Part shown: in pieces, positions 404 to 56,776 of the stretch
How positions within the stretch are numbered: position 1 is the first letter of the stretch
How the letters are laid out: each line of letters opens with the position of its first letter
IMG/VR virus record: IMGVR_UViG_3300035212_003113
Location: 307,676-371,675 of that record
Direction: 5' to 3' (one strand)
DNA: 64,000 nucleotides
The notes under the pieces: model-generated
What the model saw: the letters and a program-made list of their open reading frames with translations, nothing else
The model's database searches: none
What the model was told of the DNA's origin: nothing
Program-made: the position numbers and the translations under genes

Positions 404-447
404 TATCAACTGATGTACGGAATACGCAGACGTACTAGGAGGCTACG

Positions 448-3446: not shown

Positions 3447-3455
3447 GGAAATAAA

Positions 3456-6290: not shown

Positions 6291-6294
6291 CGCC

Positions 6295-9555: not shown

Positions 9556-9563
9556 GGAACAAG

Positions 9564-10181
9564 ATGAAGATAGCTGTATGGGGCGCCGACACTTTTGTCG
9601 GCAGTAACATCTGCAACTATATGTTGCAGTATACAAAAAACGATATTTTTGGTGTGTTCGTTGGTCCTCCGCCATATAGGCATATGGAAGGACCGATGCG
9701 CAGTCGTACGAGATTTGATTGGCAGGTGACGACCGATCACCATGATGCTATAGACATGCGCCTCCAGGTCGAGTCGCCGGATCTGATTATCGTCACTACT
9801 CCTGTGCCAGATATGCTTTTCAATCGCTTTGCTACATGCTACGTAGGTCCTGATTTCGAGCAATTGGGGGCATCAAAGATCTTTCTGACGCCAGAACCAT
9901 TTGGTCCTCGTCAGCCGCGTAGCGAGGGTATTGCGAGCATCATCTACTGTGATGATCCACCGGCCGATGCCAGAAAAACAGTAATCTACATAAAGGATCT
10001 GTATGACCAGCTGATGTCTTTTATAGACTCTGGCTCCAAGAATGGCAGCGCAGTCGGCATCGAGACCACCACCAGGGAGCTCTGGAGTATTCCTCGTCTA
10101 GATAAAATTACTGGATCCTCTTTAGAGGCAGCGGTTATTCACACAATCGGGTGGTATTCCTCTAACAAGTGGTTTAAATAA
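9564..10181 (+). CDS. shortened NAD-dependent epimerase/dehydratase-like (RfbB-like) protein
   Basis: MKIAVWGADTFVGSN, PFGPRQP, IYIKD, LEAAVIHTIGWY; only 205 aa; LGASK at the YxxxK position. Confidence 0.6.
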   Translation: MKIAVWGADTFVGSNICNYMLQYTKNDIFGVFVGPPPYRHMEGPMRSRTRFDWQVTTDHHDAIDMRLQVESPDLIIVTTPVPDMLFNRFATCYVGPDFEQLGASKIFLTPEPFGPRQPRSEGIASIIYCDDPPADARKTVIYIKDLYDQLMSFIDSGSKNGSAVGIETTTRELWSIPRLDKITGSSLEAAVIHTIGWYSSNKWFK

Positions 10182-33811: not shown

Positions 33812-33900
33812 GCACTACACCTGTTTAATTAGATTGCACTGCATTGACTCTATTTTTAATATTACTGAGTGATGGAAACCCTGCTCAACAAGAGGAAAAG

Positions 33901-42665: not shown

Positions 42666-42951
42666 GCACGTAGTACAGCCCCTGTCCCGTAGAAAATACC
42701 AAAAGATATACCCGGGAGATGCCGGGAGATGCTTGGAGAATACCGGGAGGTACTTGCGCGTAGAGCAGGCCTTGCCCAGTAGAAAATACCAGAAGATATA
42801 CCCGGCATTTGCCGGGAGAATACCGGGAGGTGCTTGCACGTAGTGCAGGCCTTGTCCAGTAGAAAATACCAGAAGATATACCCGGTAGATACCTGGAGAA
42901 TACCGGGAGATATCTGGAGATATCTGGAGATATCTGCACGTAGTGCAGGCC
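42666..42951 (+). repeat. non-coding tandem repeat: ~50-bp core plus 10-bp fillers
   Basis: GCACGTAGTGCAGGCCTTGTCCAGTAGAAAATACCAGAAGATATACCCGG-like cores at 42666, 42756, 42836, partial 42936; fillers GGAGAATACC/GGAGATATCT. Confidence 0.9.
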
Positions 42952-43201
42952 CCCTGAAATTTGCAAATTTTCCTAGCGTGCAATCCGCGTGCCACGCTAC
43001 CCCTCCGCCCCTATAACCCGCCAACCCCCGCCCAGGGGTTGCTTTCCTGTAAACGGCCAGGCAGCCGCCCGTAATAAAAGCGGCACAAATCTTGCCTATT
43101 ACTTTCCATTCCTTTCGGTCCTAAAGACATTCTTTCCTGATCCTGACGCGTGAGACAGGGACCCGTCCGTCAACCCCTTCCCCCTGTCTGTGAGGTAAGT
43201 C

Positions 43202-43612
43202 ATGACCACCACCATCACAGCCCGCGCCGCCTACGTTGCTACCGTAACCAAGACCGCGCTGGCGCTGGCCATCATGGCTCAAGAAGAATATCGCAAGGCG
43301 GTAGTGGAGGCGTTTGCCGCCTATGACGGCGGGCGCCCCGGCGCGGCGGCCGTCGCCGCCTTGCGGCGCGTGGCAGTCCGGCCCGCCACCGCCATTGAAA
43401 GCCGCCGCCCGGCGACGGAGACCGCCGCCCTTCTCGTGAACGCCTATGACGGCGGATACGACGCGGCGGAACGAGCCGCACGCCGTTGGGACATTGACGC
43501 CGTCGAGGGCGTCCCCTTCGCCGACCGGGTTGATGCCCGCCCATGGTTCCTTAATGTCATGCCTGATGGGACTGAGATGTGGCAGACGATTCCCGATGAC
43601 GTCGAGTTCTGA
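43202..43612 (+). CDS. cassette gene, Ala-rich hypothetical protein
   Basis: Preceded by element, leader L1 and GAGG; followed by hairpin and T-tract. Confidence 0.7.
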   Translation: MTTTITARAAYVATVTKTALALAIMAQEEYRKAVVEAFAAYDGGRPGAAAVAALRRVAVRPATAIESRRPATETAALLVNAYDGGYDAAERAARRWDIDAVEGVPFADRVDARPWFLNVMPDGTEMWQTIPDDVEF

Positions 43613-43771
43613 TGGCCGGGGCCGACCCTGCCCTGTCTGCCCCGGCTAGCCCGGGGCTTTTCTTTCACCGGGTTTCGAGCCGGGCCGGTCCTAAAAACAT
43701 TATCTTTTGATCCTGACGCGTGAGACAGGGATCAGTCCATCAACCCCTTCCCCCTGTCTGTGAGGTAAGTC

Positions 43772-44005
43772 ATGACCACCGCCGCCGTCACCACCGCCGC
43801 CCTCGCCGTCAACGCCCTCGCCGCCGCCCTCGATGCCGTCCGCGCCGCTCACGCCGCGTCACCGTCCTGCCCGGCGGCGGCCGCCGCGTTGGCGGTTACG
43901 GAGGCCGCGCTGGAACTCGCAAACCAAGGGCTCGACTCCGCCATCGGGGCGGATTCCATCGACTGGCGCCCGGGGCTTTGCGAGAGTCTCGTCGCCGGGG
44001 AATGA
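43772..44005 (+). CDS. cassette gene, Ala-rich hypothetical protein
   Basis: Preceded by element, leader L1 and GAGG. Confidence 0.7.
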   Translation: MTTAAVTTAALAVNALAAALDAVRAAHAASPSCPAAAAALAVTEAALELANQGLDSAIGADSIDWRPGLCESLVAGE

Positions 44006-44032
44006 CCCCGGCCTTCCCTCTCACCCTTCCGA

Positions 44033-44063
44033 CCCCGGCCACGCGCCGGGGTTTTTTTATTTT
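44033..44063 (+). terminator. intrinsic terminator, representative of cassette terminators
   Basis: CCCCGGC-CACGC-GCCGGGG plus T-tract; similar CCCCGGC..GCCGGGG+T hairpins near 44711, 45112, 48650, 49200. Confidence 0.8.
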
Positions 44064-44261
44064 CTGTCCGCCGTCGTCGCACGCCTATGTCACGGTCAAG
44101 GTCTAGGGCGGGGCGTCCCCGGCGCCAGCCCCGGCACGGGCCGGGGCTTTTCTTTTGCCCGGTCTCGAACCAGGCGAAATCCTAAAGACATTATCTTTTG
44201 ATCCTGTATGTCGAGACAGGGATCAGTCCATCAACCCCTTCCCCCTGTCTGTGAGGCCGTC

Positions 44262-44696
44262 ATGACCGCTTTCAATGACACGTTCCCCATCGTCGGCATG
44301 ACTGCCAAGTCCGTTGGACTCTGTAAGGACAAAGACGGCGGGGACGCCGTCCGATTCACGTTCGCGGACGGCAGCGAGTGGTTGATGCACCACTCGCGCA
44401 GCTGCTGCGAGTATGTTGGCCTCACGCAGGTCGACGGCGACCTGTGCGACCTTGTTAACTCCCCGCTCGTCATGGCGGAGTGCGCGGGCGAGATTGTCGA
44501 CGACATCGACGAGGACGGCCACTCGCTCGGAACAAGCGGTTGGACGTTCTACCGCTTCGCCACGGGGAAGGGCTACGTCACCCTGCGCTGGCAAGGCAAT
44601 AGCAACGGGTATTATTCAGTCGAGGTCTCTTTCTATCAGACGAAAGAGTCCGCGTCGATATCGTTCTATGATAACGACGACGACGACAACTACTAA
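44262..44696 (+). CDS. conserved phage hypothetical protein (CCE...WTFY...SNGYYS family)
   Basis: HHSRSCCEYV..VDGDLCDL, WTFYRFATGKGYVTLRWQGNSNGYYS; start re-called after GAGG. Confidence 0.75.
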   Translation: MTAFNDTFPIVGMTAKSVGLCKDKDGGDAVRFTFADGSEWLMHHSRSCCEYVGLTQVDGDLCDLVNSPLVMAECAGEIVDDIDEDGHSLGTSGWTFYRFATGKGYVTLRWQGNSNGYYSVEVSFYQTKESASISFYDNDDDDNY

Positions 44697-44828
44697 CCCG
44701 TAGTGAATCGCCCCGGCCCTGCCGGGGCTTTCGCTTTTCCGGGTTTCTTTCCCGGCCCCGGCCGGTCCTAAAGACATTATCTTTTGATCCTGATGCGCGG
44801 GACAATCCAGTCCCGTTTGGAGGCCGCC

Positions 44829-45089
44829 GTGACCATCCGCCGCACTGCTACCATCGTTGATGCCACCGCCGTCCGCACGGCGGTCATCGCCGCCCGTCTG
44901 CGGGCCGCCTACAGCGAGGCCGGTGACGCTGAGGCGGCCCGCATTCATCGGGGGCAGCTCGACGACGGTACGGTGGTGGTGGGGGTGCTTGACGCCCCTC
45001 CGCCCCCGCCGACGGAAGCGGAGTTGGTAGCGGAGCGCATCCGGGCGATGCGCGCCCGTATGGGTGGCGCGGCCCGCCCGCTCCGGTGA
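44829..45089 (+). CDS. cassette gene, hypothetical protein
   Basis: GTG start after GGAGG downstream of element 44764. Confidence 0.65.
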   Translation: MTIRRTATIVDATAVRTAVIAARLRAAYSEAGDAEAARIHRGQLDDGTVVVGVLDAPPPPPTEAELVAERIRAMRARMGGAARPLR

Positions 45090-45241
45090 ACCCGGCCCGC
45101 CGCTTCTCTCGCCCCGGCCCTGCCGGGGTTTTCTTTTGCCCGGTCTCGAGCCTGGCCCGTCCTAAAAACATTTCTTTTTGATCTTGTATGTCGAGACAGG
45201 GTCCAGTCCGTCAACCCCTTCCCCCTGTCTGTGAGGCAACC

Positions 45242-45604
45242 ATGAAGACCACCCGCGCCACCACCGCCGCCGTCAACGCCGCCATCGGGCGCGCCCACGC
45301 CCTCCTCTCCTTCGCCGCGCAAGCGGCTGAAGACGCCGACCTCGCCGCCACCACCGCCGCCGCCTACGGTGACGGCGGCGAAGCAGCCGCCTACGGAGCC
45401 GCCGCCGCCGCATGGGCGGCCAGCGGCGACGCCGCCGCCCGAAAGGGGGCAATCCTCGCCCCCCTCGTCGAGGGGGGGCGCATCACCCCCGCCCGCGCGG
45501 AGGAGGTGGTCAACGACCCCGCTTACTATCCCCTGGGGGACGAGGTCCTCCAAGACGAAGACGGAGTTTCCTACTCCGTCTGGGGGCACCCGGTTTACTG
45601 GTGA
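45242..45604 (+). CDS. cassette gene, Ala-rich hypothetical protein
   Basis: MKTTRATT after leader L1 and GAGG. Confidence 0.7.
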   Translation: MKTTRATTAAVNAAIGRAHALLSFAAQAAEDADLAATTAAAYGDGGEAAAYGAAAAAWAASGDAAARKGAILAPLVEGGRITPARAEEVVNDPAYYPLGDEVLQDEDGVSYSVWGHPVYW

Positions 45605-45742
45605 CCCCCGCCCCCCCGACCCCGCCCTAACCCGGCGGGGTTTCCGCTTTTCCGCTTTTCTTTCCCGGCCCCGGCCGGTCCTAAAAACATTTCTTTTTGA
45701 TCCTGTTAGATGTCAGAACAACCCGCAACACCCGGAGGCAGT

Positions 45743-45952
45743 ATGTCTAGCTATGACTGCATGTTTGAGCGCCTGAGCGCGGCTTCGGCCGCCGACAAGG
45801 CCGAGACCCCCACCGCCACCACTCCCGAGTGGCGCCTGCGGCCCACCCCGGGCCGGGACATCTGCTACTACTGCGGGACCGACAATGGCCCGCTTAGCGG
45901 GGAGTGCAGCTCCCGGCAAGGGCACGATTGCTATCACTGCGGCGGGAACTAA
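45743..45952 (+). CDS. cassette gene, small Zn-finger-like protein
   Basis: CYYCG...CSS...CYHCGG; GGAGG upstream. Confidence 0.65.
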   Translation: MSSYDCMFERLSAASAADKAETPTATTPEWRLRPTPGRDICYYCGTDNGPLSGECSSRQGHDCYHCGGN

Positions 45953-46092
45953 CTCCCGCCCATCGCCCCGCCCCGCCAGCAAGGCGGGGCCTTGCCGTTT
46001 TCTGCGTTTCTTTCCCGGCCCCGGCCGGTCCTAAAGACATTCTCTCTTGATCCTGTTAGGCGTCAGAACAACCCGCAACACCCGAGGCTCGC

Positions 46093-46425
46093 ATGGCGTT
46101 TGTGAACTTGACCCCCCACACCATCACCGTCGTCGACCAAGCGGGCGCGCCCGCGCTCGTCCTGCCCGCCGACGGGACCGTCGCCCGCGTGGCGACAAAG
46201 ACGGCCGTGGCCGCCGTCGTCGACGGCGTGGAGATTTTCGAAACCTCTTTCGGGGAGGTCGTCGGCCTCCCCGCGCCGGCCCCCGGCGTGACGTGGGTTG
46301 TCTCCGGCCTCGTCGCCGGACACCCGGCGGTGCGGGGCCGTACCGACGTCCTTTCCCCCGGGGCGCTTGTGCGCGGCCCCGATGGTCAGCCGGTTGGCTG
46401 CCGGGGCTTGAGCCGTCCCGCGTGA
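46093..46425 (+). CDS. conserved viral hypothetical protein (NLTPH family)
   Basis: NLTPHTIT...ARV...GLPAP...VVSGLVA...RTDVLSPG..VR..DG...GCRGL. Confidence 0.75.
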   Translation: MAFVNLTPHTITVVDQAGAPALVLPADGTVARVATKTAVAAVVDGVEIFETSFGEVVGLPAPAPGVTWVVSGLVAGHPAVRGRTDVLSPGALVRGPDGQPVGCRGLSRPA

Positions 46426-46539
46426 GCGGCTCCCCGGTCAATCGACCGGGCTGCCCGGCTCGTCACCCGTCCTAAAAACATTATCTTTTGATCCTGTTAG
46501 ACAGAAGCCGGAACGAAACAAACCGGCACGGAGGATACG

Positions 46540-47007
46540 ATGAAGACCCTGACGATTATGCGTGGCGTCCCCGGTAGCGGCAAGAGCACCCTTGCCAAGG
46601 TGCTCGCCAACGTCCCGGGCGTCGAGACGGCTCCCGTGTTTTCCACAGATGATTTTTTCATGGTCGATGGCGAGTACCGCTTCGACGGGTCGAAGCTCGG
46701 GGCCCACCACGCGGCCAACCTCCGCCGCACGGCGGAGGCGATGGAAGCCGGTGTTACCCACGTCATCGTGGACAACACTATGACTCAAGGATGGGAGGCG
46801 CGGGAATATGTCCGCGCCGCGACCTTCCACGGATACAGGGTGCAGTTCGTCGAGCCGCGCACGCCGTGGGGGCGGGACGCGGCGGAGTGCGCCGCCCGTA
46901 ACTCTCACGGGGTTCCCCTCGCCGCAATCGAGGGGATGCTGGCCCGGTGGGAGCCGGACCTCACCCCGGAAGCGTGCTTGAACGCCCGCGCCCCGTGGGA
47001 GGGGTGA
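46540..47007 (+). CDS. P-loop kinase, AAA_33/N4BP2-like
   Basis: MRGVPGSGKST, FSTDDFF, VIVDNT, HGVP...IEGML. Confidence 0.85.
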   Translation: MKTLTIMRGVPGSGKSTLAKVLANVPGVETAPVFSTDDFFMVDGEYRFDGSKLGAHHAANLRRTAEAMEAGVTHVIVDNTMTQGWEAREYVRAATFHGYRVQFVEPRTPWGRDAAECAARNSHGVPLAAIEGMLARWEPDLTPEACLNARAPWEG

Positions 47008-47110
47008 GAGATGCCCGGCGCCGGCCGGGCTCTTTCCCCGGCCGGTCCTAAAAACAGAAAGTTTTGATCCTGATAGGCAGAGCGGCAAACAACACGCCGC
47101 AGGAGGCAAC

Positions 47111-47425
47111 ATGCGTACCGAAACGACCCTCTCTGTTCGCATTGGAATCGTAAATGCCATGGCCCGCCGGGCCGGGGACGCGGGCCTGGCTGCCCGTGCA
47201 GATCAGGTCACGGATCTCGCCTTTGCCTTGCTCGCCATCGGCGGCGACGCCGGGCCGGTGGTGGAGGCACTGGCCAACCTCGCCGGAGAGTTGGAAACGG
47301 CGATGGTACGCCGTGGCTTCAACCGCCGCGAGATTCCGGCGGTTATCCGCCGGGACTGCGAAGCTGCCGGGCTGCCGGTGGCCGATGCCACGGTCACGGT
47401 CCGCAAGCCGGGGGTGGGGCTGTGA
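47111..47425 (+). CDS. cassette gene, hypothetical protein
   Basis: AGGAGG upstream; follows element 47044. Confidence 0.7.
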   Translation: MRTETTLSVRIGIVNAMARRAGDAGLAARADQVTDLAFALLAIGGDAGPVVEALANLAGELETAMVRRGFNRREIPAVIRRDCEAAGLPVADATVTVRKPGVGL

Positions 47426-47568
47426 AGCCGTGGAACATCCCTGACGACGAAACCGATAACCGCCCCGCCCGCATGGGCCGGGGCCGCCCGGCGGGTGAGT
47501 CGCCCCGCCCGACAAAGGGTCGTCCCCGCTCGTGGGATGCCCGCCGAAGGGAAAAGCGCCGCGACTAG
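47422..47568 (+). CDS. small Arg/Pro-rich peptide
   Basis: GTG overlapping the upstream stop; MKPWNIPDDETDN...WDARRREKRRD. Confidence 0.45.
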   Translation: MKPWNIPDDETDNRPARMGRGRPAGESPRPTKGRPRSWDARRREKRRD

Positions 47569-47650
47569 CGGACCGGGGGAGCAATCCCCCGCCCGCCTTC
47601 CGCCGGTCCTAAAAACATTCTTTTTTGATCTTGATAGGCAAGAGGTGAGT

Positions 47651-47749
47651 ATGACCCGCCGCGATGCTGCCGATGCGTTTTTCTTCCTTGCCGGTATGTT
47701 TGTTCTCGTGTTCGTCTATCCCGTCTTGTTCTACGGGATGGCGGGTTAG
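47651..47749 (+). CDS. 32-aa membrane peptide
   Basis: GAGGTG SD; MTRRDAADAFFFLAGMFVLVFVYPVLFYGMAG; has its own element (47605). Confidence 0.6.
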   Translation: MTRRDAADAFFFLAGMFVLVFVYPVLFYGMAG

Positions 47750-47825
47750 TCTCCGGGGCCGGTGCCCCCTTTCTCGCCGGTCCTAAAAACATTCTTTCCT
47801 GATCCTGTTAGTCACGGAGGCAGCG

Positions 47826-48038
47826 ATGAAAGACAAGGCTGGCAAGATGACGGTGACCTTTCCCGACGGCAGCAAGCTGACGGCCATGGCTCCGATGGGG
47901 CTCCCCGGTACGCTGGCCACGGTCGGATGGGAGGCCCACCGCGCCCGGGCGGCGATAGCCGAGATGGACATGACAAGTATTCAAAGGCTCCTGCGCCACT
48001 CCGATGCGCTGCGGGCGCTCCGGCAAGCGGGCTACTGA
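47826..48038 (+). CDS. cassette gene, hypothetical protein
   Basis: GGAGG SD after element 47779. Confidence 0.7.
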   Translation: MKDKAGKMTVTFPDGSKLTAMAPMGLPGTLATVGWEAHRARAAIAEMDMTSIQRLLRHSDALRALRQAGY

Positions 48039-48126
48039 TAAGGAATCGGGCCGGGGCTTGTCCCCGGTGCCGAGCCGGACCGGTCCTAAAAACATTCTTT
48101 TCTGATCCTAATAGGCGGAGGTCAGC

Positions 48127-48291
48127 ATGGCTCAATCGGTTCGGATTCGCATCGCTGGAAACTTCGGGCACGCGCTTTGCCTGTGCCCGGGGTGTTGTCC
48201 CCGTGGCGGCGGGGGCAAGGCGGCCGTCAAGCGCAAGACGGCGCGGGCCGTCCGGCGTTCCGAGCGCCGGGAGATCGAGACGGAGGATTAG
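48127..48291 (+). CDS. 54-aa Cys/basic peptide, missed by the ORF track
   Basis: GGAGG at 48117; MAQSVRIRIAGNFGHALCLCPGCCPRGGGGKAAVKRKTARAVRRSERREIETED. Confidence 0.65.
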   Translation: MAQSVRIRIAGNFGHALCLCPGCCPRGGGGKAAVKRKTARAVRRSERREIETED

Positions 48292-48370
48292 CCGTCCCGG
48301 CCCGGGGAGTCGCATCCCCGGTCCCGAACCTGCCCGGTCCTAAAAACATTATCTTTTGATCTTGATAAGC

Positions 48371-48628
48371 ATGAACAACAACGACAGCCTCACTGCCCGA
48401 TCCAACATCGTCGCGCTCCGGCGCGCCGACCGCGATGCGGCTGCCGCGCGCCGCGCGGGCTACGGAACTGACCGCGCCGCTTGGTGCGGCGTCGATGCCG
48501 GCCTTGCCAAGCTCATGACGGAGGCGGGCCTTTTCGCCCGCCTGCCCGCTGAGGCCCGCGAGCAGTGGGACGCCGGTTGTCTTTCCGCGTCGGAAGCTTT
48601 CGCTATCATCGGCGACGAACTATTTTAG
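48371..48628 (+). CDS. cassette gene, probably leaderless
   Basis: ATG falls exactly on the inferred +1 of element 48336; no SD. Confidence 0.65.
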   Translation: MNNNDSLTARSNIVALRRADRDAAAARRAGYGTDRAAWCGVDAGLAKLMTEAGLFARLPAEAREQWDAGCLSASEAFAIIGDELF

Positions 48629-48772
48629 TTCGCCGCCCACCCTTCCACCGCCCCGGCCCCGCCGGGGCTTTTCTTTTGCCAGGTCTCGAACCTGGCAGCG
48701 GTCCTAAAAACAGATATTTCTGATCCTGTTAGACATCGGAACGGCGGCACGGGCCGCACAACGGAGGATAGC

Positions 48773-49183
48773 ATGGCTTCGCAAAAGCGCTCTCTCGCCC
48801 TTGACATTCGTCTCGCTGGCATCGATTTCCCGTCGGACGTGGGCCGGGCGTTGGAGTTCTACGTTAACGGCAAGCTCCTGTTTCGTGGGGACCGTGCGGG
48901 ATTCGAGCGGCTCTGGGCCGCTCTCCCAAATATCCATGCCGCTTTCGGCGGGATGGAGTCTGAAGGCGTGCGCCCCTTCCGCACGGGGACCGTGCGCTTT
49001 CAGCCGGGCCGCAACCCGCAAGTCGGATACGTCTACACGTTGGAGGACGTGGCCGCCTGCATGCTGTTCCGTCATGAAGTCGAGGAAGCTCTTGACGGGC
49101 GCGGGGCGTTCCTGCCGGACGACGTGCTCGAAGATACTCACTCCTGCGCAGGGTGGGGATGTGTTTGTCACAGTGAGAGCTAG
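48773..49183 (+). CDS. cassette gene, hypothetical protein
   Basis: GGAGG SD after element 48700. Confidence 0.7.
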   Translation: MASQKRSLALDIRLAGIDFPSDVGRALEFYVNGKLLFRGDRAGFERLWAALPNIHAAFGGMESEGVRPFRTGTVRFQPGRNPQVGYVYTLEDVAACMLFRHEVEEALDGRGAFLPDDVLEDTHSCAGWGCVCHSES

Positions 49184-49339
49184 CCTCACAGCGGGCCTCG
49201 CCCGGCCCCGGCCTAATCAGCCGGGGTTTTTTTGTCTTTTTTTGCGGGCGTCATCGGTCCTAAAAACATAACTTTTTGATCCTGATAGGTGTCCAGCGGT
49301 TCCCGGCGCTCCTGCCGGCCCGCCCTGCCCGAGGTTAGC

Positions 49340-49648
49340 ATGACCAACGTCATCGGCATTATTCTCTCTACCGACTACGGCACCCTCGAAATCGAGGGGG
49401 TGGAGGCCGGCGCTCTTGCCCGCCTGCGCCGTGACCCGGTACTGGTCGCGGCCGTGGAGGCGGCCGACGACGACGCCTTTGCGGCTCGTCTCATCGACCT
49501 CCACCCGGAAGTGGCGGACTATGAGGTCCCGTCAACCGACTTCCTGCGGGTGACGCGCCTGCCCGCCGGCACCCGGTACGGGATTGTCATGGGCGACGGG
49601 GATACCGAAGCGCTCGTCTCGGAGCTTGACCTTACCGAGACGGCATGA
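49340..49648 (+). CDS. cassette gene, hypothetical protein
   Basis: GAGGT SD; MTNVIGIIL. Confidence 0.65.
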   Translation: MTNVIGIILSTDYGTLEIEGVEAGALARLRRDPVLVAAVEAADDDAFAARLIDLHPEVADYEVPSTDFLRVTRLPAGTRYGIVMGDGDTEALVSELDLTETA

Positions 49649-49743
49649 CCGTCCGGGCGGGGGCCGGGTTCACCCGGCTCCGCCCCTCTCCTCCCCGGTC
49701 CTAAAAACAGATTCTTTTGATCCTGTTAGACATGGAGGCCACG

Positions 49744-50010
49744 ATGAAGCTGACAAAGAAGGAAGCTCGCAACGTTCGCGTTCTCGCCGCGCAGCACGAC
49801 GGGTTGGACGTGCTCGCCAGTGCGGCGGGCATCGCCCGGGGCGACCGCTCGGTCGCTTACCCGGTGGAGAACCGGGGCCGGGTGGGTTGGTTCAAGCAGG
49901 TGTGCCACCTCGCCGGCCGCGAGACGGGTCGCAACCACTGGGTTGCGGCGGTGGTCCGCGCCAACCGTCCCGCTAACGCGGTGGCGATTCTCCGGGCGCT
50001 CGAAGACTAG
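49744..50010 (+). CDS. cassette gene, hypothetical protein
   Basis: GGAGG SD; an in-frame ATG at 49732 also sits on the inferred +1. Confidence 0.7.
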   Translation: MKLTKKEARNVRVLAAQHDGLDVLASAAGIARGDRSVAYPVENRGRVGWFKQVCHLAGRETGRNHWVAAVVRANRPANAVAILRALED

Positions 50011-50192
50011 CGGGTGACGGGCCGGGGCGCGTAGCCCCGGACCCGAGCCTACCGGTCCTAAAAACAGATTCTTTTGATCCTGTTAGACAGAACGGCGGCG
50101 ACGAAACGATACGATGCGCCGCACATAACGGGTTAAACGTAGCGCCGGTGGTCGGCGGTACGCTAGGCCCTAGAAACAAAAGGGAAAGCACA

Positions 50193-50705
50193 ATGTCGCT
50201 CATCAAGTTTGGTTCCAACACCGGCAACTCTGGCAACACCCTTGCTCTCCCCGCTCCCCGTGTGACGGCGCCCGCCCCTATGGCGCCGATGCCTCTCCCG
50301 GCGCCGGTCGCTGCGACGAGCACGAGCCCGGACATTGCGGCTCTTATGGCGAGGCTTGCGGCGGCCGAGGCGGGGCTCGCTACAGAGAAGGCCCGGGCCG
50401 ATGCGGCCGAGGCTGCCCGTGCGGCGAGTGGCGGTAGCCGTGGATACAGCATGAAGGCGTCGGAGAAGGGCGCTATCTCGATCTACGGCGTCTCTACCAA
50501 GTTCCCGGTGACGCTCTACGCTCCCCACCTCGTGGGAATCATCCGTGATCTGGTTATGACCGGCAAGGCGTCGGCGTTCCTCCGGGAGAATGCGGCGAAG
50601 CTTTCGGTCAAGGTCGACGGCACGGGCCAGGCGGGCACGGGTGCTTCGGAATCGGCAGTGCGCAGCCTTGCCGATGAGCTTGATCGGGTCACCCGCAAGG
50701 CGTGA
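50193..50705 (+). CDS. MSLIK paralogue 1 (coiled coil + SEKGAISIYG..FPVTLY domain)
   Basis: Near-colinear similarity to 53453..53896 and 54869..55297. Confidence 0.8.
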   Translation: MSLIKFGSNTGNSGNTLALPAPRVTAPAPMAPMPLPAPVAATSTSPDIAALMARLAAAEAGLATEKARADAAEAARAASGGSRGYSMKASEKGAISIYGVSTKFPVTLYAPHLVGIIRDLVMTGKASAFLRENAAKLSVKVDGTGQAGTGASESAVRSLADELDRVTRKA

Positions 50706-50826
50706 ACGGTAGGAAGGGGGCCGGGTTCGCCCGGCCCTTTCCTTCCCCGCCGGTCCTAAAAACAGATTCTTTTGATCCTGTTAGACAAGCGGCGACGACG
50801 AAACAAACGCCGCGAATGGAGACGCG

Positions 50827-51219
50827 ATGCGCAAGCAGTCTGCTCGTTCCCTCACCCTTGCTCTTTCCCGTGCCGCTGCTGACGTGCTTGTCGGCAAGCT
50901 GTCAAGCCTTAACTATGGGAATACCACCACGCCGGGGCCGCGTCAAACGGCCATCCTCGCAGATATTGCCCGCCGCAAGGCAACCCGGCGCGGGCGTCGG
51001 GCTGCTACTGCCGCTGAGATTGCGGAAACGCAAGGCATCCCGGTCTCCAACGTGGAGCGGGCGCTGTCCTGTCTCCGGTGCCGTGGCCTTGTCGACCGCC
51101 GGGGCACCCGGTTCGGCCTTACCATCCGGGGGACGGAAGCTGCCGCCCTGTTCTCCGGGGTGCAGGTGCCCGACGGCATCGGGCTGGTCCTGACTGGTCA
51201 TGCTATCCGCAAGGTGTGA
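50827..51219 (+). CDS. winged helix-turn-helix protein
   Basis: RQTAILADI...TAAEIAETQGIPVSNVERALSCLRCRGLV...LTIRG. Confidence 0.75.
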   Translation: MRKQSARSLTLALSRAAADVLVGKLSSLNYGNTTTPGPRQTAILADIARRKATRRGRRAATAAEIAETQGIPVSNVERALSCLRCRGLVDRRGTRFGLTIRGTEAAALFSGVQVPDGIGLVLTGHAIRKV

Positions 51220-51320
51220 CCGTCCGGGGCGGGTCGGGGGAGAAATCCCCCGGCCTTTCCTTCCGGCCCCGGTCCTAAAGACATACTTACCTGATCCTGA
51301 TAAGCACAACGGAGGCCGGT

Positions 51321-51515
51321 ATGAAAAGCAAGTTTTCTTGCCCTACTTGTAAGCAACGCCCTGCGTGTGACTGTGCACCCCCGGACTATGCCCGGATGCG
51401 CCGGGAAAGCGAGCATGCACCGTCGACTGCCGTCTATGTTGCCGCCCTGCAACGTGCATGGGAGCACCGTGCGATGATGCTCGAAGCGGACGAGACCCGC
51501 GACCACCGCGATTAG
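51321..51515 (+). CDS. small Cys-rich protein
   Basis: CPTC...CDC; GGAGG SD. Confidence 0.65.
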   Translation: MKSKFSCPTCKQRPACDCAPPDYARMRRESEHAPSTAVYVAALQRAWEHRAMMLEADETRDHRD

Positions 51516-51533
51516 CGGGTAGGAGGACTGCGC

Positions 51534-51716
51534 ATGAAAGAGCTTTTCTTTTGCATTGATCAGGAACACGTTGATGCCGGGGAGTTCCTGCCCGGCGAGA
51601 TCGGGCACTGGGCAGTGCGCGGACTCCCCGGCGGGGTGCTCGTATTCAACAACCGCTATCTAGCCGAACTGGTGTGGGCGGGTATCGCACCTCACCACGG
51701 CTACGCTCACAACTAG
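51534..51716 (+). CDS. hypothetical protein
   Basis: AGGAGG SD. Confidence 0.65.
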   Translation: MKELFFCIDQEHVDAGEFLPGEIGHWAVRGLPGGVLVFNNRYLAELVWAGIAPHHGYAHN

Positions 51717-51795
51717 GGGATCGGGGCGGACACCTGCCCCTTTCCTTCCCGGTCCTAAAAGCATACCGGGCCGATCTTGATAGCCGGGAGGCACG

Positions 51796-51987
51796 ATGGA
51801 ACGGCTCCGACAAACGCTCCGGGCGTTGTTCGCCCCGCCGCATTATCCGCCCGGCTATGCGCCGGTGTCCGGTCATGCGGTGCATTCATACGAGAAAAAC
51901 TATTTTCTGGCGGACACGCGCCGCCGTGCGAGGGTAGCCTATGAAGCCGCGAAACGCAATCTTGTTGCAGATGATCCTAACCCGTAA
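51796..51987 (+). CDS. cassette gene, hypothetical protein
   Basis: GGAGG SD after element 51751. Confidence 0.65.
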   Translation: MERLRQTLRALFAPPHYPPGYAPVSGHAVHSYEKNYFLADTRRRARVAYEAAKRNLVADDPNP

Positions 51988-52178
51988 AGGCGGGGTCATG
52001 CGCGACCGCAAGGCGGAATCGAAACGCCGGGCGTGCCGGGGGCGAGTCCGCCGGGACCGCGACGACGAGTGACCGGCTGGGGCGCCAGCCCCACCTGGCT
52101 CGCGACCGGTCCTAAAAACATACTCCTCTGATCCTGTATAGCAGAAGCCGGAACGAAACCAACTAGCAGGAGGCAGCT

Positions 52179-52472
52179 ATGTCCAAGGTTCACTTCAACA
52201 CCGGTCGTCTTTATGGTCCCCATGGTCAACGCATCGTGGCTATGCAGTGCCCTTCCGGCGAAGTTGTGTTCGTTGACCGGGACCGGGGCATCCTAGGTGC
52301 CTTGACTGAAAAGTCGGGGGAGATGGGCGCCAACACCGGAGGCGTCAAGGTGTTCCCGCCGTTGACGGCGGCGCAGGTACAGGCGGAAGTCAGTCGCCGC
52401 TATGTCGGCAGCTACGCTTATCAAAGCAGCTCACTGGCCTACCAGTTTGAGGCGCAGCTTCTCGCGGACTGA
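52179..52472 (+). CDS. cassette gene, hypothetical protein
   Basis: AGGAGG SD after element 52108. Confidence 0.7.
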   Translation: MSKVHFNTGRLYGPHGQRIVAMQCPSGEVVFVDRDRGILGALTEKSGEMGANTGGVKVFPPLTAAQVQAEVSRRYVGSYAYQSSSLAYQFEAQLLAD

Positions 52473-52556
52473 GGTCCGGCCCCGCACGCGCGGGGTTCTT
52501 TGCTGAGCCGGTCCTAAAAACAGATTCTTTTGATCTTGTTAGACACGGAGGCGACG

Positions 52557-52850
52557 ATGCGCAGCAGCGAGCAGGTTTTCGTGGCAGTCGTTTCAACCTC
52601 CCGCCACTTTGGCGGGCATGAGGAAGGCGGCTGGTGGTTCGACTGGTCGAATGTAGAAAAGGCGTGGTCTTTTGACAACCCGCGCCGGGCGCGCCGGTTT
52701 GCCCGGCGGCTGGAACGCGAGGAAGCGCATTACGCGCCGCGTCATGACCGCTTCTCGGTTCTCGGCGGGACCGATGTAGAAGTCCGCCGCACGCGGGACC
52801 CGGAAGCACTCGCCGAATGGCAGAGCCGGCAGCGCCCGCGATACGAGTGA
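52557..52850 (+). CDS. cassette gene, hypothetical protein (GGxEEGGWW motif)
   Basis: GGAGG SD; FGGHEEGGWWFD. Confidence 0.7.
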   Translation: MRSSEQVFVAVVSTSRHFGGHEEGGWWFDWSNVEKAWSFDNPRRARRFARRLEREEAHYAPRHDRFSVLGGTDVEVRRTRDPEALAEWQSRQRPRYE

Positions 52851-52945
52851 GCGGACAACGGACCGGGGCCTAGCTCCGGTCCCGAGTCCGGCCGGTCCTA
52901 AAAACATAAACTTTTGATCCTGATAGGTGCCACAACGGAGGCTGC

Positions 52946-53146
52946 ATGCAGGTGACGGAGATTGCGATTGACGGCAACGGCAACGCGACGGTGAACGCCC
53001 GCGAGGGCGGGATGGAAGCGGCGCTCGCCCGCGCCCCGTGGGCGCTGCGGGGATGGGCGGCGGAACGCTGCAATCTGGAAATGACGGGGCGGGAGTACCT
53101 GACCCGCCGCGCCGAGATGCTGCGGGCGCTGGCGGACGTCCGCTAG
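52946..53146 (+). CDS. cassette gene, hypothetical protein
   Basis: GGAGG SD after element 52894. Confidence 0.7.
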   Translation: MQVTEIAIDGNGNATVNAREGGMEAALARAPWALRGWAAERCNLEMTGREYLTRRAEMLRALADVR

Positions 53147-53452
53147 GGGACGGGGTGCCGGGGGGGCACCTGACTCCGGACCGGGCCTAAAAACATACTC
53201 CTCTGATCTTGTCCCGCATACGTGGGAGGTGTGCCATGCGGGGCTAAAAGATTGCAAAACTTATCTGCAAGGGCCAACGGCGAGTCCGGGGGCGGGCGTC
53301 CTATTGTCCGAAAAGCGCGGTCGCCACCGGTCCTAAAAACAGCTTCCCCTGATCTTGTAGGGTGTCCCGGCGACGACGCCGCGACGCAGCGCCGATGACG
53401 CAGCGCCCGATGGTCGGGGGTTGCGGATAGGCTAGAACGCAGGATACAAGCC

Positions 53453-53896
53453 ATGTCGCTTATCAAGCTCCCCGCCCCTGTCGCCGCCACCGTTGCCACG
53501 CCCGTCACGGCGCCGTCTCTGTCTCCTGACATTGCCGCGCTCATGGCCCGCCTCGCAGCGGCGGAAGCTGCGGTCGCGACGGAAAAGGCCCGCGCCGACG
53601 CCGCTGAAAAGGTCAAGGCGGAGTCGCGGGGTTATTCTGCGAAGGCATCGGAAAAGGGCGCGGTTTCCATCTACGGGGTTAGCGCCCGCTTCCCTGTCAC
53701 GCTGTATGCCCCGCACTTTGTCGGGGTGTGCCTTGACCTTATCATGACGGATAAGGGGGTCAACTTCCTGCGTGAAAACGCGGATAAGTTGTCTGTCAAG
53801 GTGGACGGCACCGGGCAGGCCGGGACGGAGGCGAGCCGGGCGGAAGTGCTGCGCCTCGCAGACCGGCTGGCCGGTGCGGTTGCCCGCCTGAAGTGA
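53453..53896 (+). CDS. MSLIK paralogue 2
   Basis: SPDIAALMARL...KASEKGAVSIYGVSARFPVTLYAPH. Confidence 0.8.
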   Translation: MSLIKLPAPVAATVATPVTAPSLSPDIAALMARLAAAEAAVATEKARADAAEKVKAESRGYSAKASEKGAVSIYGVSARFPVTLYAPHFVGVCLDLIMTDKGVNFLRENADKLSVKVDGTGQAGTEASRAEVLRLADRLAGAVARLK

Positions 53897-54868
53897 GGCG
53901 GGCCGGGGGTGGGCGGGGCGACCCGCCTGCCCCTTTTCCGGCGACCGGCGCCCGGCCGGACCCGCCGGGTTCGCCACCGGCCCTAAAAACATACTCGCCT
54001 GATCCTGTAGGACGTACTCTGGTGACAAACCGGGGCGGGCGAACTATTCCTTTTTTTATTGCCCGGCGCGGGGCAGTCCGGTCGTCGGTCCTAAAAACAT
54101 ACGCCGACGATCCTGACAGACGGGTCAACGGGACAACCGGGGGCGGGATAGGTGCGTCGATTGCAAGAAAAAACCGGGGAACAATAACAGGATCGGGAAA
54201 GCCCGTTTTTAGGACCGGGATTGCCTGCAAAGTTTATGCCCCTTTTTATTGTGCCGGTCCTAAAAACAGCTTCTCCCGATCCTGTTACGCGTCAACGCTA
54301 TAGTCGGGGGCGGGGAGAGGTGTATCCGGTGGATTAGTTATGTGGACAAAAGATCCGTTTTGTTTTTGCGTTTTATGATAGCTGACAGGGGCCGGCGGTC
54401 CTAAAGACGGAGTCCGCCGATCCTGTAACCTGCGTCAACGGGACAACCGGGGACGGGTGCGGTGTGCCTAGTGGCTTTGTAATGCTGATGCAATGTTTGC
54501 AGGATCTTTTCTATCTGTTATTAGGATTGCGGCTTCAGTCCTAAAGACGGTGTTGTGTGATCCTGTTGTGCTTTTACTGATTCTGGCTTTCCCTAACGGT
54601 AGAGAGCTGGGAGATAACTTTATAATCTTTAGCAGGCCGCCCGGGCTTGCTGGATAGCTATTGTCTCGCGCGCGTTGATAGGGATGCTTGGTAGGTTGCT
54701 AGATAGTACCTGCTAGAAAGCAGTTTTTCTTGACAGGGGGCGGCGGTCCTAAAGTCGGGGTCCGCCGATCCTGTAGAGCAGAACGGCGGCCCACTACATA
54801 GCCGCAAAGGTGAAGCGTTATACCCGGTGGTCGGGTATCTCGTGGAGCCTAAATACAGGGAGAGCATC

Positions 54869-55297
54869 ATGTCGCTCATCAAGGTCGGAACCCCCGTCGC
54901 CAACAACACCGTCACCTCTGTCAGCCCGGATGTGGCAGCTCTCATGGAGCGTCTCAAGGCTGCCGAGGCTGCGCTGGCAGCAGAGAAGGCCCGTGCCGAT
55001 GCTGCTACCAAGACTAAGGGCGAGGCGCGTGGTTACACCGCCAAGGCCAGCGAGAAGGGTGCTATCAGCATCTACGGTGTGTCCGCTCGCTTTCCTGTCA
55101 CGGTCTACGCTCCCCACTTTGTGGGGATTGCGCTGGACCTCATCATGACCGACAAGGGAGTGGCGTTTCTCCGGGAGAACGCTGATAAGCTCTCTGTCAA
55201 GGTGGATGGTACCGGGACCGCTGGTACCGAGGCTAGCCGTGCCGAGGTTCTCCGGCTGGCTGACCGTCTCGCTGAAGCTGTCGCCAAGCTGAAGTGA
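54869..55297 (+). CDS. MSLIK paralogue 3
   Basis: SPDVAALMERL...KASEKGAISIYGVSARFPVTVYAPH; start re-called. Confidence 0.8.
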   Translation: MSLIKVGTPVANNTVTSVSPDVAALMERLKAAEAALAAEKARADAATKTKGEARGYTAKASEKGAISIYGVSARFPVTVYAPHFVGIALDLIMTDKGVAFLRENADKLSVKVDGTGTAGTEASRAEVLRLADRLAEAVAKLK

Positions 55298-55658
55298 GGC
55301 AGGCAGGTGGGGGCCGGGATAACCCGGCTCCCTTTCCTGTTAGAATGACAGCTTACCCCTACACAGGTGGCAATAATGCTGCGCTTTTTGGAACTTCCTC
55401 CTAGCCGTCCTGACGTCGAGCCTACGTGGACGGAGTGTATTGCGATGGCCTTTCAATGTGCCCGCTTTGCGCCGCTCGAAGCGGACAGGGCACGGGCCAT
55501 GCATGCTGCCTGTAGCTGGTTAGAAAAAGGCTTGTTTTGGCTTGATTGAAGCCACTACCGGGGAGGGGCGACTCTCCCCGGTACCTACAACCTGCAACAC
55601 ACCTGCCAACGGGACAACCGGGGGCGGGCGATCTATTCGCGCGCGCGTTGTGTGCTCC

Positions 55659-56025
55659 GGTCCTAAAAACAGCGATTTCTGATCCTGATACAGTTGCCCC
55701 TCTGTCAGGCAGAGGATTGCAGCGTTCCGGTCCTAAAGACGGGTGTTGCTGATCCTGTAGGGGTTTGCCGATTGCCTGCAATCCTCTGCCCTTGCTCCGT
55801 CCTAAAGACGGGGATCTGTGATCCTGTATCGGTTTGACCTGTGTGTGTCTATATACTTGTTTCTATGTGAAACGCGCCGGTCCTAAAAACAGATTCTTTT
55901 GATCCTGTCGCCCTTTGTCTTTTTGTCAACTTCACGCGGTCCTAAAAACATACTCGCCTGATCCTGTTAGCATTTTCTTTTTTCTAGACTCGCTCCAGTC
56001 CTAAAGACGGTGTGCCCTGATCCTG
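55659..56025 (+). repeat. ORF-free cluster of six 29-bp elements with 30-52-bp gaps
   Basis: Starts 55659, 55729, 55798, 55879, 55938, 55997; gaps 41, 40, 52, 30, 30. Confidence 0.9.
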
Positions 56026-56281
56026 TCCCGGTTGCCCCGCTGTTTGCTTCTTCTCTCTTTTTCTTGTGCCTAGAGCGGCTGGCCTATTGCCGGCAGACAA
56101 CCGCTTTGCAGCGTTTACCCGTCTGAAGAATAATGGGCAAAAGATACCAAGGGAACCGCCACCACCCACCGGGAGCTAAAACCTCTCTTGATGCCGGTAT
56201 TACAGCTGTACTAAGTATTAGACAGCTGCTAGTTGACCCGCGCCGGCTCTAAAGCCGGGTATGCCGCTGTATGGAGTTGTC

Positions 56282-56776
56282 ATGAAACTTGACAAAGTCG
56301 CGCTGTCTTATGCAAGATCCAGCGAAGAAGCTATATCTATACTAACAGAGAGCAGACCAGAGTTTGTCCCGCTGCTGCATCCTGATGATTTGCGTAAGAT
56401 AACAAAATATATTGTTGCCTGCAATAACCATAATCATAAAGTCTTCAAGGTTACTATACCCCTGTTTGCTTGGTACGAGCATAGGATATGGCCAGATCCT
56501 TCTGCCTTTCCTAGCAGCACAGGAATCATTTACTCTATCATGGTGTGGGTAAAGTCTCCAAAAAGAGTTCTGAAAAAGAACTTCACTCTTTTGTATCCAT
56601 TTGATCTGGGTTCTAATGCCGCATTAGACAGGGAAAGCATAAAGGAAATAATCCGATTGAAGGTAGAGAAAATAGAGAGTATGAAGGTTAGCTATAAGGC
56701 TGCCGCTGATAAGCTAAAGAATATGGCAATCGTGACAATCGGGGCCGGGCCTAAAGTCGGGTCCGGCCGATCCTGA
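56282..56776 (+). CDS. MKL-signature protein inside the cassette array
   Basis: MKLDKVAL after GGAG; stop codon lies at the right end of element 56747. Confidence 0.65.
   Translation: MKLDKVALSYARSSEEAISILTESRPEFVPLLHPDDLRKITKYIVACNNHNHKVFKVTIPLFAWYEHRIWPDPSAFPSSTGIIYSIMVWVKSPKRVLKKNFTLLYPFDLGSNAALDRESIKEIIRLKVEKIESMKVSYKAAADKLKNMAIVTIGAGPKVGSGRS

What the first reader, a model, noticed from the sequence alone, without database searches (positions are those of the whole stretch)
55659..56025. CRISPR-like-looking mini-array of six elements with a 15-bp inverted repeat enclosing the second copy
Seen: six elements with gaps of 41, 40, 52, 30 and 30 nt, alternating between AT-spacer and GC-spacer types. 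GGCAGAGGATTGCAG (55708-55722) and its exact reverse complement CTGCAATCCTCTGCC (55776-55790) bracket the copy at 55729, so a stem could place that element in a loop. The later gaps are very T-rich. Inference: a structured non-coding platform (ssDNA/RNA hairpin) or a variant library of the element.
Basis: partly seen in the sequence, partly recalled or inferred. Interest (0 to 1): 0.6.

Follow-up and report, generated by a model that had tools for sequence, protein, structure and literature searches.

The report
Stack of six phage promoter copies
The six repeats are not a CRISPR-like array: they are six gene-less copies of the promoter-like signal that precedes about 55 early genes of an uncultivated 372-kb jumbo phage, and related phages keep the same stack, so it is a functional control region whose exact job is unknown.

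Summary
There are six 28-nt elements at 55660-56025, and an exact 15-nt inverted repeat brackets copy 2.

The elements are not private to this locus. The same bipartite motif (5' box GKCCTAAAR, 9-10 variable bases, 3' box YGATCYTG) occurs 67 times on the + strand of the 371,675-bp phage genome. All copies lie in the pre-replicative gene block. They sit after terminators or stop codons, and 11-115 nt before a ribosome site and start codon. I read the motif as the phage's early-class promoter.

The six copies have no ORF. They lie in a 984-nt spacer between a duplicated small gene and the long early gene block. Related metagenomic phages keep an ORF-less stack of 3-7 copies at the same place. 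Both boxes are invariant there, while spacers and gaps diverge. This argues for selection rather than decay.

The inverted repeat is kept in the closest relative with four compensatory pair changes. It is absent from two other relatives.

Best reading: a tandem promoter battery in a regulatory hub, with a lineage-restricted hairpin. CRISPR, ToxI-like and spacer-acquisition readings are rejected. No RNA data could be obtained, so the function is inferred.

The parts
55309..55382 (+). Two terminator-like hairpins with T tails (55309-55332 and 55367-55382) that end transcription of the upstream gene 54869-55297
   Evidence: Terminator scan. The first hairpin is conserved in relatives L024 and L029.
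55607..55650 (+). Conserved element just before the array: a G-rich 22-mer (55607-55628) followed by a CG-alternating run
   Evidence: Exact or near-exact copies at 54126, 54436 and 55607. It is aligned in six units. It is nearly invariant in L024 and L029 at the same place.
55660..55687 (+). Copy 1 of the 28-nt promoter-like motif (AT-spacer type)
   Evidence: 0 mismatches. Orthologous copies at L024:1713 and L029:1916.
55708..55722 (+). Left arm of the 15-nt inverted repeat
   Evidence: I2. Pairing and covariation with L029.
55730..55757 (+). Copy 2 (GC/hairpin type), enclosed by the inverted repeat
   Evidence: (local hairpin -12.5 kcal/mol).
55776..55790 (+). Right arm of the inverted repeat
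55799..55826 (+). Copy 3 (GC/hairpin type)
   Evidence: -10.5 kcal/mol. Orthologue at L024:1828.
55880..55907 (+). Copy 4 (AT-spacer type). Its 28 nt are identical to the gene promoters at 49698, 50055 and 50753.
   Evidence: Orthologue at L024:1912.
55908..55937 (+). T-rich gap after copy 4, lying 11-30 nt upstream of copy 5
   Evidence: Sequence. In array units of four phages the T fraction peaks 11-20 nt upstream of the motif.
55939..55966 (+). Copy 5 (mixed spacer). It has no counterpart in L024.
55967..55996 (+). T-rich gap after copy 5, upstream of copy 6
55998..56025 (+). Copy 6 (GC type)
   Evidence: Orthologues at L024:2001 and L029:2264.
56149..56210 (+). Conserved sequence island (56149-56174) and a 10-bp palindrome (56201-56210) between the array and the next gene. 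These are probably protein-binding sites.
   Evidence: Nearly invariant in four phages, with no covarying RNA pairs.
56246..56273 (+). Degenerate seventh copy. The 5' box is kept with one change and the 3' box is lost. It marks the left edge of the inserted gene 56282-56776.
   Evidence: D6. Orthologous to the full copy at L024:2304. The matching full copy in the window sits at 56748.

Best explanation
The six elements are six complete, co-oriented copies of the phage's own early-class promoter. They are stacked without genes in a 984-nt regulatory spacer. That spacer separates about 25 single-gene promoter-gene-terminator cassettes from the long block of pre-replicative genes.

Shown: the motif is the most over-represented sequence in the genome. 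It is strand- and region-specific. It sits between a terminator or stop codon and a ribosome site. Its two boxes stay invariant across related phages while everything around them changes.

Inferred: each copy recruits RNA polymerase, meaning host core enzyme with a sigma factor or activator that I could not identify. The phage encodes one sigma-like protein and two sigma-region-4 proteins. Each copy fires rightwards. No canonical terminator lies between the stack and the next genes, so the copies would add up to a multi-start, high-flux entry into the downstream genes.

The T-rich gaps sit where an upstream A/T-rich promoter element of the next copy would lie. Read-through RNA from copy 1 can fold the 15-bp stem with copy 2 in its loop. 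That hairpin is a lineage-restricted add-on (processing, stability or attenuation), not the core of the device.
For: Genome-wide motif: 67 copies on the + strand and 2 on the - strand, all within genome 350.8 kb -> end -> 123 kb, although + strand genes fill the rest of the genome too. It is the top k-mer family in the genome.

Context: 10 of the class A copies follow terminator-like hairpins. 53 of 67 copies have an RBS and start codon 11-115 nt downstream. The orphans are the six array copies plus three nearby copies.

Gene content of the motif-bearing block is T4-early-like: rIIA, topoisomerase II, RNA ligase.

Orthologous promoters in relative G001 (77% nt identity) keep both boxes, while spacers change and the hairpin is kept by compensatory changes.

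Array conservation: ORF-less stacks at the same syntenic place in L029 (6 copies), L024 (6), L033 (7), L032/L035 (4) and L026 (3). Window versus L024 is 63% identical overall, and window versus L029 is 69.6%. By my reading of the aligned copy sequences, the boxes are identical in every aligned copy.

Array units share an extra GTTT box about 5 nt after the motif.

There is no terminator-like site between 55400 and 56282. A T tract lies 11-20 nt upstream of array units.
Against: Promoter activity, start sites and the polymerase form are therefore all inferred.

The motif does not fit the sigma-70 consensus, and no sigma-70-like promoter enrichment exists anywhere in the genome.

In L024 the downstream gene has two promoters of its own, so the stack is not obviously needed to express it.

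A spacing of 52-81 bp is shorter than a bacterial open-complex footprint (about 75 bp, from established knowledge). Neighbouring copies would compete rather than add.

The conserved GTTT box and the orphan status could instead mean a function in which productive transcription is not the point.
Confidence: 0.55

Rival explanations
1. Sink or short-RNA factory. The stacked copies bind polymerase, sigma or an activator without making useful mRNA. They would titrate the transcription machinery, or release short U-rich RNAs, to time or buffer early expression.
For: The copies are orphans with perfect boxes. They carry an array-specific GTTT tract at about the expected start, followed by T runs. Such tracts in initially transcribed regions are known to favour non-productive or reiterative transcription (established knowledge of pyrBI-type promoters; a lead, not a test). 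The spacing is too tight for simultaneous open complexes. The downstream gene in L024 has its own promoters.
Against: There are no hairpin terminators inside the stack, so released short RNAs are not predicted by canonical rules. Array RNA shows no excess complementarity to early mRNA leaders: z from -1.9 to +1.9. There is no expression data.
Confidence: 0.18
2. The motif is primarily the binding site of a phage DNA-binding regulator (operator or stoperator-like), or of a segregation or condensation protein. The stack would then be a high-avidity cluster of such sites.
For: The motif is bipartite, with box centres about 20 bp apart (two helical turns). The copies are orientation-consistent and intergenic. 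The clusters are always next to a conserved, duplicated small gene of unknown fold. The phage encodes HTH/sigma-r4 proteins.
Against: In the cassettes a terminator lies 20-30 nt upstream, and nothing else conserved is available to act as a promoter. The motif must therefore at least overlap the promoter. No partner protein is identified.
Confidence: 0.12
3. Transcription-activated or iteron-type replication origin: repeated promoter copies plus T-rich unwinding tracts in a large non-coding region.
For: The region is a large conserved non-coding stretch with direct repeats, an inverted repeat and pyrimidine/T-rich tracts. The trough of cumulative GC skew is at genome 354-360 kb, 3-9 kb upstream of the stack. 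T7 and T4 origins pair promoters with unwinding elements (established knowledge).
Against: The skew trough is broad and is confounded by strand bias of genes and the GC-rich cassettes. The RNA made would be U-rich, which disfavours stable R-loops. The 'iterons' are the same as 60 gene promoters. No initiator is identified.
Confidence: 0.08
4. Non-functional debris of cassette shuffling: promoters left behind when the genes between them were deleted.
For: Promoter-mediated gene gain and loss does occur here. Gene 56282-56776 is absent from L024, L033, L032 and L035, and is flanked by a half copy and a full copy of the motif. Copy number and order differ among relatives.
Against: Both boxes are invariant in all orthologous orphan copies against 63-70% background identity. 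All six copies are perfect. The stack persists at the same place in at least five diverged phages. Recombination between direct repeats leaves one copy, not a stack.
Confidence: 0.05
5. CRISPR-like mini-array, or a ToxI-like antitoxin RNA repeat array.
For: Unit sizes resemble repeat plus spacer (28 + 30-52 nt). A gene of 164 aa follows the array.
Against: The middle 9 nt of the 'repeat' vary. The same element precedes about 55 genes. There are no spacer matches. There is no Cas1. The downstream protein has no Pfam or PHROG family and is missing in relatives that keep the array.
Confidence: 0.01

Closest known systems
PeSL elements (promoter-early stem-loop cassettes) of T4-type phages (PMC2839356, PMC4122927)
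   Same: A conserved composite of stem-loop/terminator, promoter, Shine-Dalgarno sequence and start codon is repeated before many small orphan genes in a plastic early region. It is associated with gene gain and loss between close relatives. Here gene 56282-56776 is inserted between a half copy and a full copy of the motif.
   Different: PeSL promoters are sigma-70-like (TTGACA-N17-TATAAT variants). This motif is not. PeSLs flank genes, and a conserved gene-less stack of 6-7 copies is not described in the passages I read. In class B copies the stem-loop overlaps the 5' box rather than preceding the promoter.
Tandem early promoters A1, A2, A3 at the left end of phage T7 (own knowledge)
   Same: Several strong co-oriented promoters are stacked ahead of the first early genes, followed in T7 by an RNase III hairpin. 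T7 uses them for high-flux early transcription and transcription-driven genome entry.
   Different: The T7 promoters are sigma-70 promoters spaced about 100-125 bp apart, and there are three of them at a genome end. Here there are six, spaced 59-81 bp apart, inside the early region, with an unknown polymerase form.
Sigma-28 (FliA/SigD) promoters, TAAA-N15-GCCGATAA (own knowledge)
   Same: The 5' box contains TAAAG and the class B 3' box contains CCGAT, the core letters of the two sigma-28 elements. Region 2 of the phage's 262-aa sigma-like protein weakly resembles the FliA/WhiG family (E 0.0016).
   Different: The spacer is 5 bp shorter (TAAA-N10-sCCGATCC), which standard sigma-28 geometry would not accept. 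The resemblance is recalled, not tested.
CRISPR arrays and phage mini-arrays
   Same: Regularly spaced units of about 28 nt with gaps of 30-52 nt.
   Different: The repeats are not identical through their length. There are no cas genes, no protospacer matches, and the element is dispersed singly before genes.
Promoter-plus-unwinding-element origins (T7 primary origin, T4 oriF/oriG) and iteron origins (own knowledge)
   Same: Tandem promoters or direct repeats next to A/T-rich tracts in a non-coding region.
   Different: There is no evidence of initiation here. The repeats are identical to the ordinary gene promoters.

Membership tests
CRISPR array | Direct repeats conserved along their whole length | tested here: not met
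   Only 19 of 28 positions are conserved. The central 9 nt range from AT-rich to GC-rich. TRF finds no array.
CRISPR array | Spacers derived from foreign DNA; cas genes or a leader nearby | tested here: not met
   No match in phages at E<=1, and only a 23-nt chance match (E 0.4) in plasmids. No Cas1 in the genome.
PeSL-type regulatory cassette | Stem-loop/terminator immediately upstream of a conserved early promoter, then SD and start codon, repeated in a plastic region | tested here: met
   Met for the class A cassettes at 43.1-53.3 kb. The six stacked copies themselves lack the stem-loop (except copy 2's bracket) and lack the SD and start codon.
PeSL-type regulatory cassette | Promoter of sigma-70 type | tested here: not met
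   No TTGACA/TATAAT-like pair in the motif. Sigma-70-like sites are at chance level genome-wide: 35 on + and 28 on -.
PeSL-type regulatory cassette | Associated with gene insertion or deletion between close relatives | tested here: met
   Gene 56282-56776 is present in the window and L029. It is absent in L024, L033, L032 and L035, and is flanked by motif copies.
Bacterial/phage promoter (general) | Transcription starts a fixed short distance downstream | not testable with these tools
There are no RNA reads.
Bacterial/phage promoter (general) | Intergenic, co-oriented with the downstream gene, conserved in orthologous positions | tested here: met
Sigma-28-type promoter | TAAA and GCCGATAA separated by 15 nt | tested here: not met
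   The boxes resemble it, but the spacing is 10 nt (counted on the sequences).
Intrinsic terminator (for the inverted repeat) | GC-rich stem, short loop, U tract directly after | tested here: not met
   The loop is 53 nt and the tail holds 3 T in 8. It is not reported by the terminator scan.
Structured RNA/DNA hairpin under selection (for the inverted repeat) | Pairing kept by compensatory changes in relatives | tested here: met
   Window unit 2 versus L029 unit 2: 4 double changes keep pairs, 1 pair is broken and 10 are unchanged. But only two lineages carry it, it is absent in L024 and L033, and templated quasi-palindrome correction could mimic selection.
Type III toxin-antitoxin (ToxI-like repeats) | Tandem near-identical RNA repeats followed by a ToxN/AbiQ-family gene | tested here: not met
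   The units are under 70% alike. The downstream protein has no family hit. The array persists without that gene.
Invertible promoter (inverton) | Promoter between inverted repeats, both orientations found, recombinase nearby | tested here: inconclusive
   A promoter copy does lie between inverted repeats. But the 53-nt segment is very short, only one orientation is seen in the window and in the L029-L031 assemblies, and no reads were available.

The most novel reading that the evidence does not exclude
The stack is a dedicated, conserved non-coding device of a family of uncultivated jumbo phages. It would be built from promoter modules that are selected for binding or initiating without expressing a gene. 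Possible roles are an RNA-polymerase/sigma loading or trapping platform, or a promoter-derived origin. One module would be gated by a covarying long-range stem. The underlying promoter would belong to a new class: sigma-28-like boxes at a 5-bp shorter spacing, with the 5' box presented in a hairpin loop in one subclass, read by a phage-encoded sigma.
Probability: 0.2. Interest if true: 0.72.

Novelty: new variant of a known kind. Interest (0 to 1): 0.5.

Why it matters
Transcription programmes of uncultivated jumbo phages are almost unknown. This locus gives three things. First, a clean and highly conserved promoter-like motif that partitions a 372-kb genome into a pre-replicative regulon. Second, direct evidence that this motif mediates gene-cassette turnover, as PeSLs do in T4-type phages. 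Third, a conserved gene-less stack of the motif whose boxes are under purifying selection. If the stack proves to be a polymerase-loading, trapping or origin device, it would be a new regulatory architecture. The compact 28-nt promoter with graded variants would also be useful for phage engineering. If it is simply a strong compound promoter, the finding is ordinary but still annotates about 70 regulatory sites.

Tried and rejected
1. CRISPR or spacer acquisition. blastn of the 4-kb region and of the array alone found nothing meaningful in phages or plasmids. No Cas1.

2. Known RNA families and tRNAs: none.

3. Exact-pattern scans. The class A pattern found nothing else in IMG/VR. The corrected scan found two IMG/VR fragments.

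4. Protein-seeded locus searches with three neighbouring genes found no relatives in IMG/VR. The word-index protein search then found 84 homologues of the duplicated small gene, which gave the informative contigs.

6. Polymerase identity. No T7-like RNAP, Rpb2-like, MotA or AsiA hits. Only weak sigma-like proteins.

7. Antisense idea. The array RNA (GGTTTG box) would pair with the CGAACC box of early leaders, but duplex energies are no better than shuffles.

8. A conserved ncRNA after the array: no covarying pairs.

9. Function of the duplicated neighbour gene. No Pfam, PHROG or PDB sequence hit. The AF2 model has pLDDT 70.7 and no fold match. The Atlas search of the 164-aa gene was blank.

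10. Origin by GC skew: a broad trough 3-9 kb away, not decisive.

11. MAFFT plus RNAalifold on the three bracketed units mis-aligned the arms. I replaced it with an anchored pair count.

Full report
Setting. The window is the last 64 kb of a single-contig IMG/VR virus record of 371,675 bp. The record has a 127-bp end overlap and is rated complete. It is a jumbo phage with T4-like replication and early genes: a UvsW-like helicase, DnaB, ribonucleotide reductase, rIIA, topoisomerase II and RNA ligase. It also has a TubZ/PhuZ-like tubulin. Nearly all genes are on the + strand. No close relative is in the phage collection.

The observation. The six elements, their gaps (41, 40, 52, 30, 30 nt) and the exact 15-nt inverted repeat around copy 2 are all as described. 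Each element is a 28-nt bipartite unit: a 5' box GTCCTAAAR-AC, nine variable bases, and a 3' box TGATCCTG. All six match the 19 fixed positions perfectly. The pattern has 47 matches in the window against 0.02 expected. The types do not strictly alternate. TRF does not see a tandem repeat, because the units are alike only in the boxes.

What the element is. It is not local. The genome holds 67 copies on the + strand and 2 on the - strand. All lie in one arc, from genome 350.8 kb through the record's end to 123 kb. It is the most over-represented word family in the genome. The motif comes in three forms.

- Class A has an AT-rich spacer. It lies in window 43.1-53.3 kb, a 65% GC stretch made of about 25 units. 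Each unit is a terminator hairpin with T run, then the motif, a short leader, GGAG and a small gene.
- Class B has a GC-rich spacer and a CCGATCCTG 3' box. It lies in tight intergenic gaps of the next ~130 kb, usually 12-15 nt after the upstream stop codon and 20-45 nt before the next ribosome site. In class B the 5' box sits in the loop of a GC hairpin whose stem sequence differs from copy to copy (mean -15.3 kcal/mol against -2.6 for class A).
- Hybrids fold more weakly. These include array copies 2, 3 and 6.

Overall, 53 of 67 copies are followed by a ribosome site and start codon within 11-115 nt. In the cassettes nothing else conserved lies between terminator and gene, so the motif must contain the promoter. 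Sigma-70-consensus sites are at chance level throughout the genome. I found no T7-like or multisubunit polymerase, and no MotA or AsiA. The phage does encode a 262-aa sigma-like protein and two sigma-region-4 proteins. From memory, the boxes resemble the sigma-28 elements (TAAAG ... CCGAT) but with a spacer 5 bp shorter. This is a lead, not a test. Which polymerase form reads the motif is unknown.

Relatives. A corrected pattern scan found two IMG/VR fragments. One is identical to this genome. The other is 77% identical, and there three orthologous class B promoters keep both boxes while spacers change and the hairpin is kept by compensatory changes.

The gene just upstream of the array (54869-55297) has a paralogue at 53453-53896 with 79% identity. 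It also has 84 metagenomic homologues. Contigs carrying them show the same layout: cassettes, paralogue 1, a promoter-dense spacer with one inverted copy, paralogue 2, a second spacer, then the early gene block.

The second spacer holds a gene-less stack of the motif in every close relative:

- L029: six copies, spacing 62-77 nt
- L024: six copies
- L033: seven copies, spacing 52-58 nt
- L032 and L035: four copies, degenerate
- L026: three copies, loosely spaced

The more distant L027 and L028 have no stack.

The window's spacer is 63% identical to L024 and 69.6% to L029. The copies align one to one, and by my reading of the aligned copy sequences the CCTAAA and GATCCTG letters are identical in every aligned pair. 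Copies have been gained and lost: window copy 5 is missing in L024, and L024 has an extra copy. Stack units also share a GTTT box about 5 nt after the motif that gene promoters lack. They have a T-rich tract 11-20 nt upstream. No RBS-led ORF, even a short one, is present in the stacks of the window, L029 or L024. So the stack is maintained by selection on the boxes. It is not debris.

The inverted repeat. As RNA the 111-nt segment folds at -45.9 kcal/mol (z -3.7). As DNA it folds at -21 kcal/mol (z -3.8). The repeat is absent from L024 and L033. In L029, the closest relative, the positionally orthologous unit 2 is bracketed by a 19-nt repeat. When both are anchored on the shared AGAGG/CCTCT core, this repeat differs from the window's by four compensatory double changes and one broken pair. 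L029 unit 5 carries the window-type repeat as a 12-bp stem. The stem is therefore real and maintained in this lineage. The cause could be selection for pairing, or templated correction of a quasi-palindrome. It has a 53-nt loop and no U tract, so it is not a canonical terminator. It is not required for the stack.

How it most likely works. The boxes recruit polymerase at each of the six copies, which fire rightwards. No terminator-like site lies between 55400 and the next gene at 56282. The simplest model is therefore a compound, multi-start promoter that feeds the early gene block. The T-rich gaps would serve as upstream elements of the next copy. The stack sits in a regulatory hub that also holds a conserved G-rich element before it (55607-55650) and a conserved island plus palindrome after it (56149-56210). 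I give this 0.55.

The main rivals are these:

- A polymerase/sigma sink or short-RNA source. Arguments for it are the orphan status, the GTTT box and the tight spacing.
- A cluster of regulator-binding sites.
- A promoter-type origin. The GC-skew trough is 3-9 kb away, but it is not decisive.

CRISPR-like, ToxI-like and antisense-to-leader readings were tested and rejected. No RNA data could be obtained.

Comparison with known systems. The cassette region behaves like the PeSL promoter/stem-loop cassettes of T4-type phages (PMC4122927). This includes promoter-flanked gene turnover: gene 56282-56776 is present only in the window and L029, and it sits between a half copy (56246) and a full copy (56748) of the motif. 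It differs from PeSL in two ways: the promoter is not of sigma-70 type, and there is a conserved gene-less stack. The stack also recalls the T7 A1-A3 tandem early promoters. I file the finding as a new variant of a known kind.

Limits. Searches used a wrong spacer length, which wasted the only metagenome pattern scan. Promoter activity, start sites, timing and the reading polymerase are all inferred from sequence context and conservation.

Noticed in passing
window 43118-53360: About 25 single-gene units (terminator, motif, leader, GGAG, small ORF) in a 63-66% GC stretch, against about 49% for the rest of the genome. Most products are orphans. One is an AAA_33/zeta-toxin-like kinase (46540-47007) and one matches phrog_2650 (44262-44696).
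   Followed up: partly
window 43152, 43722, 44213, 45193: Four cassettes share a 44-nt leader that forms a hairpin just before the ribosome site.
   Followed up: no
window 53897-54868: A first promoter-dense spacer with eight motif copies, two of them on the minus strand (54188-54215 and 54500-54527). Five copies are followed by a G-rich 22-mer that looks like a mutated class B leader. The layout, including one inverted copy, is conserved in L024 and L026.
   Followed up: partly
window 53453-53896 and 54869-55297: Tandem paralogues (79% aa identity) of a small conserved protein with 84 metagenomic homologues. It has no family or fold match (AF2 pLDDT 70.7). Each paralogue is followed by a promoter-dense spacer.
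   Followed up: yes
window 56246-56776: Gene 56282-56776 (164 aa, lower GC) is present only in the window and L029. It lies between a half copy and a full copy of the motif, which looks like a promoter-mediated cassette insertion.
   Followed up: yes
window 55345-55540: A stretch of about 200 nt between the terminator and the pre-array element has no counterpart in L024 or L029. It carries several hairpins.
   Followed up: no
window 42908-42937: Three tandem 10-nt repeats (GGAGATATCT) lie in the divergent region just before the first motif copy at 43118. This is where the motif-bearing arc begins.
   Followed up: no
window 53250-55783: GATTGC occurs 7 times against 1.4 expected, partly as palindromes (for example 55770-55783). 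It also abuts the ends of the two inverted motif copies.
   Followed up: partly
window 10182-11528 and 33844-41037: A tubulin/TubZ-like gene whose best phage match is Bacillus phage G at 25% identity, and a 2397-aa protein with collagen-like tail-fibre segments.
   Followed up: no
G000 116-11400 (outside the window): Many 69-nt coding repeats at the start of the record. From the sequence pattern they look like MORN-type protein repeats, but no family search was run on them.
   Followed up: no
L033:4465-5245, L027:12191-12727: The early block downstream of the stack in relatives carries anti-defence-type genes: Tad3, a P22 Y8K6-like gene, and ArdA.
   Followed up: no
L032:5030-5067, L035:4987-5030, L024:2248-2270: Repeats and palindromes of a GGTATAT-type word lie just upstream of the first gene promoter after the stack. 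They look like operators.
   Followed up: no
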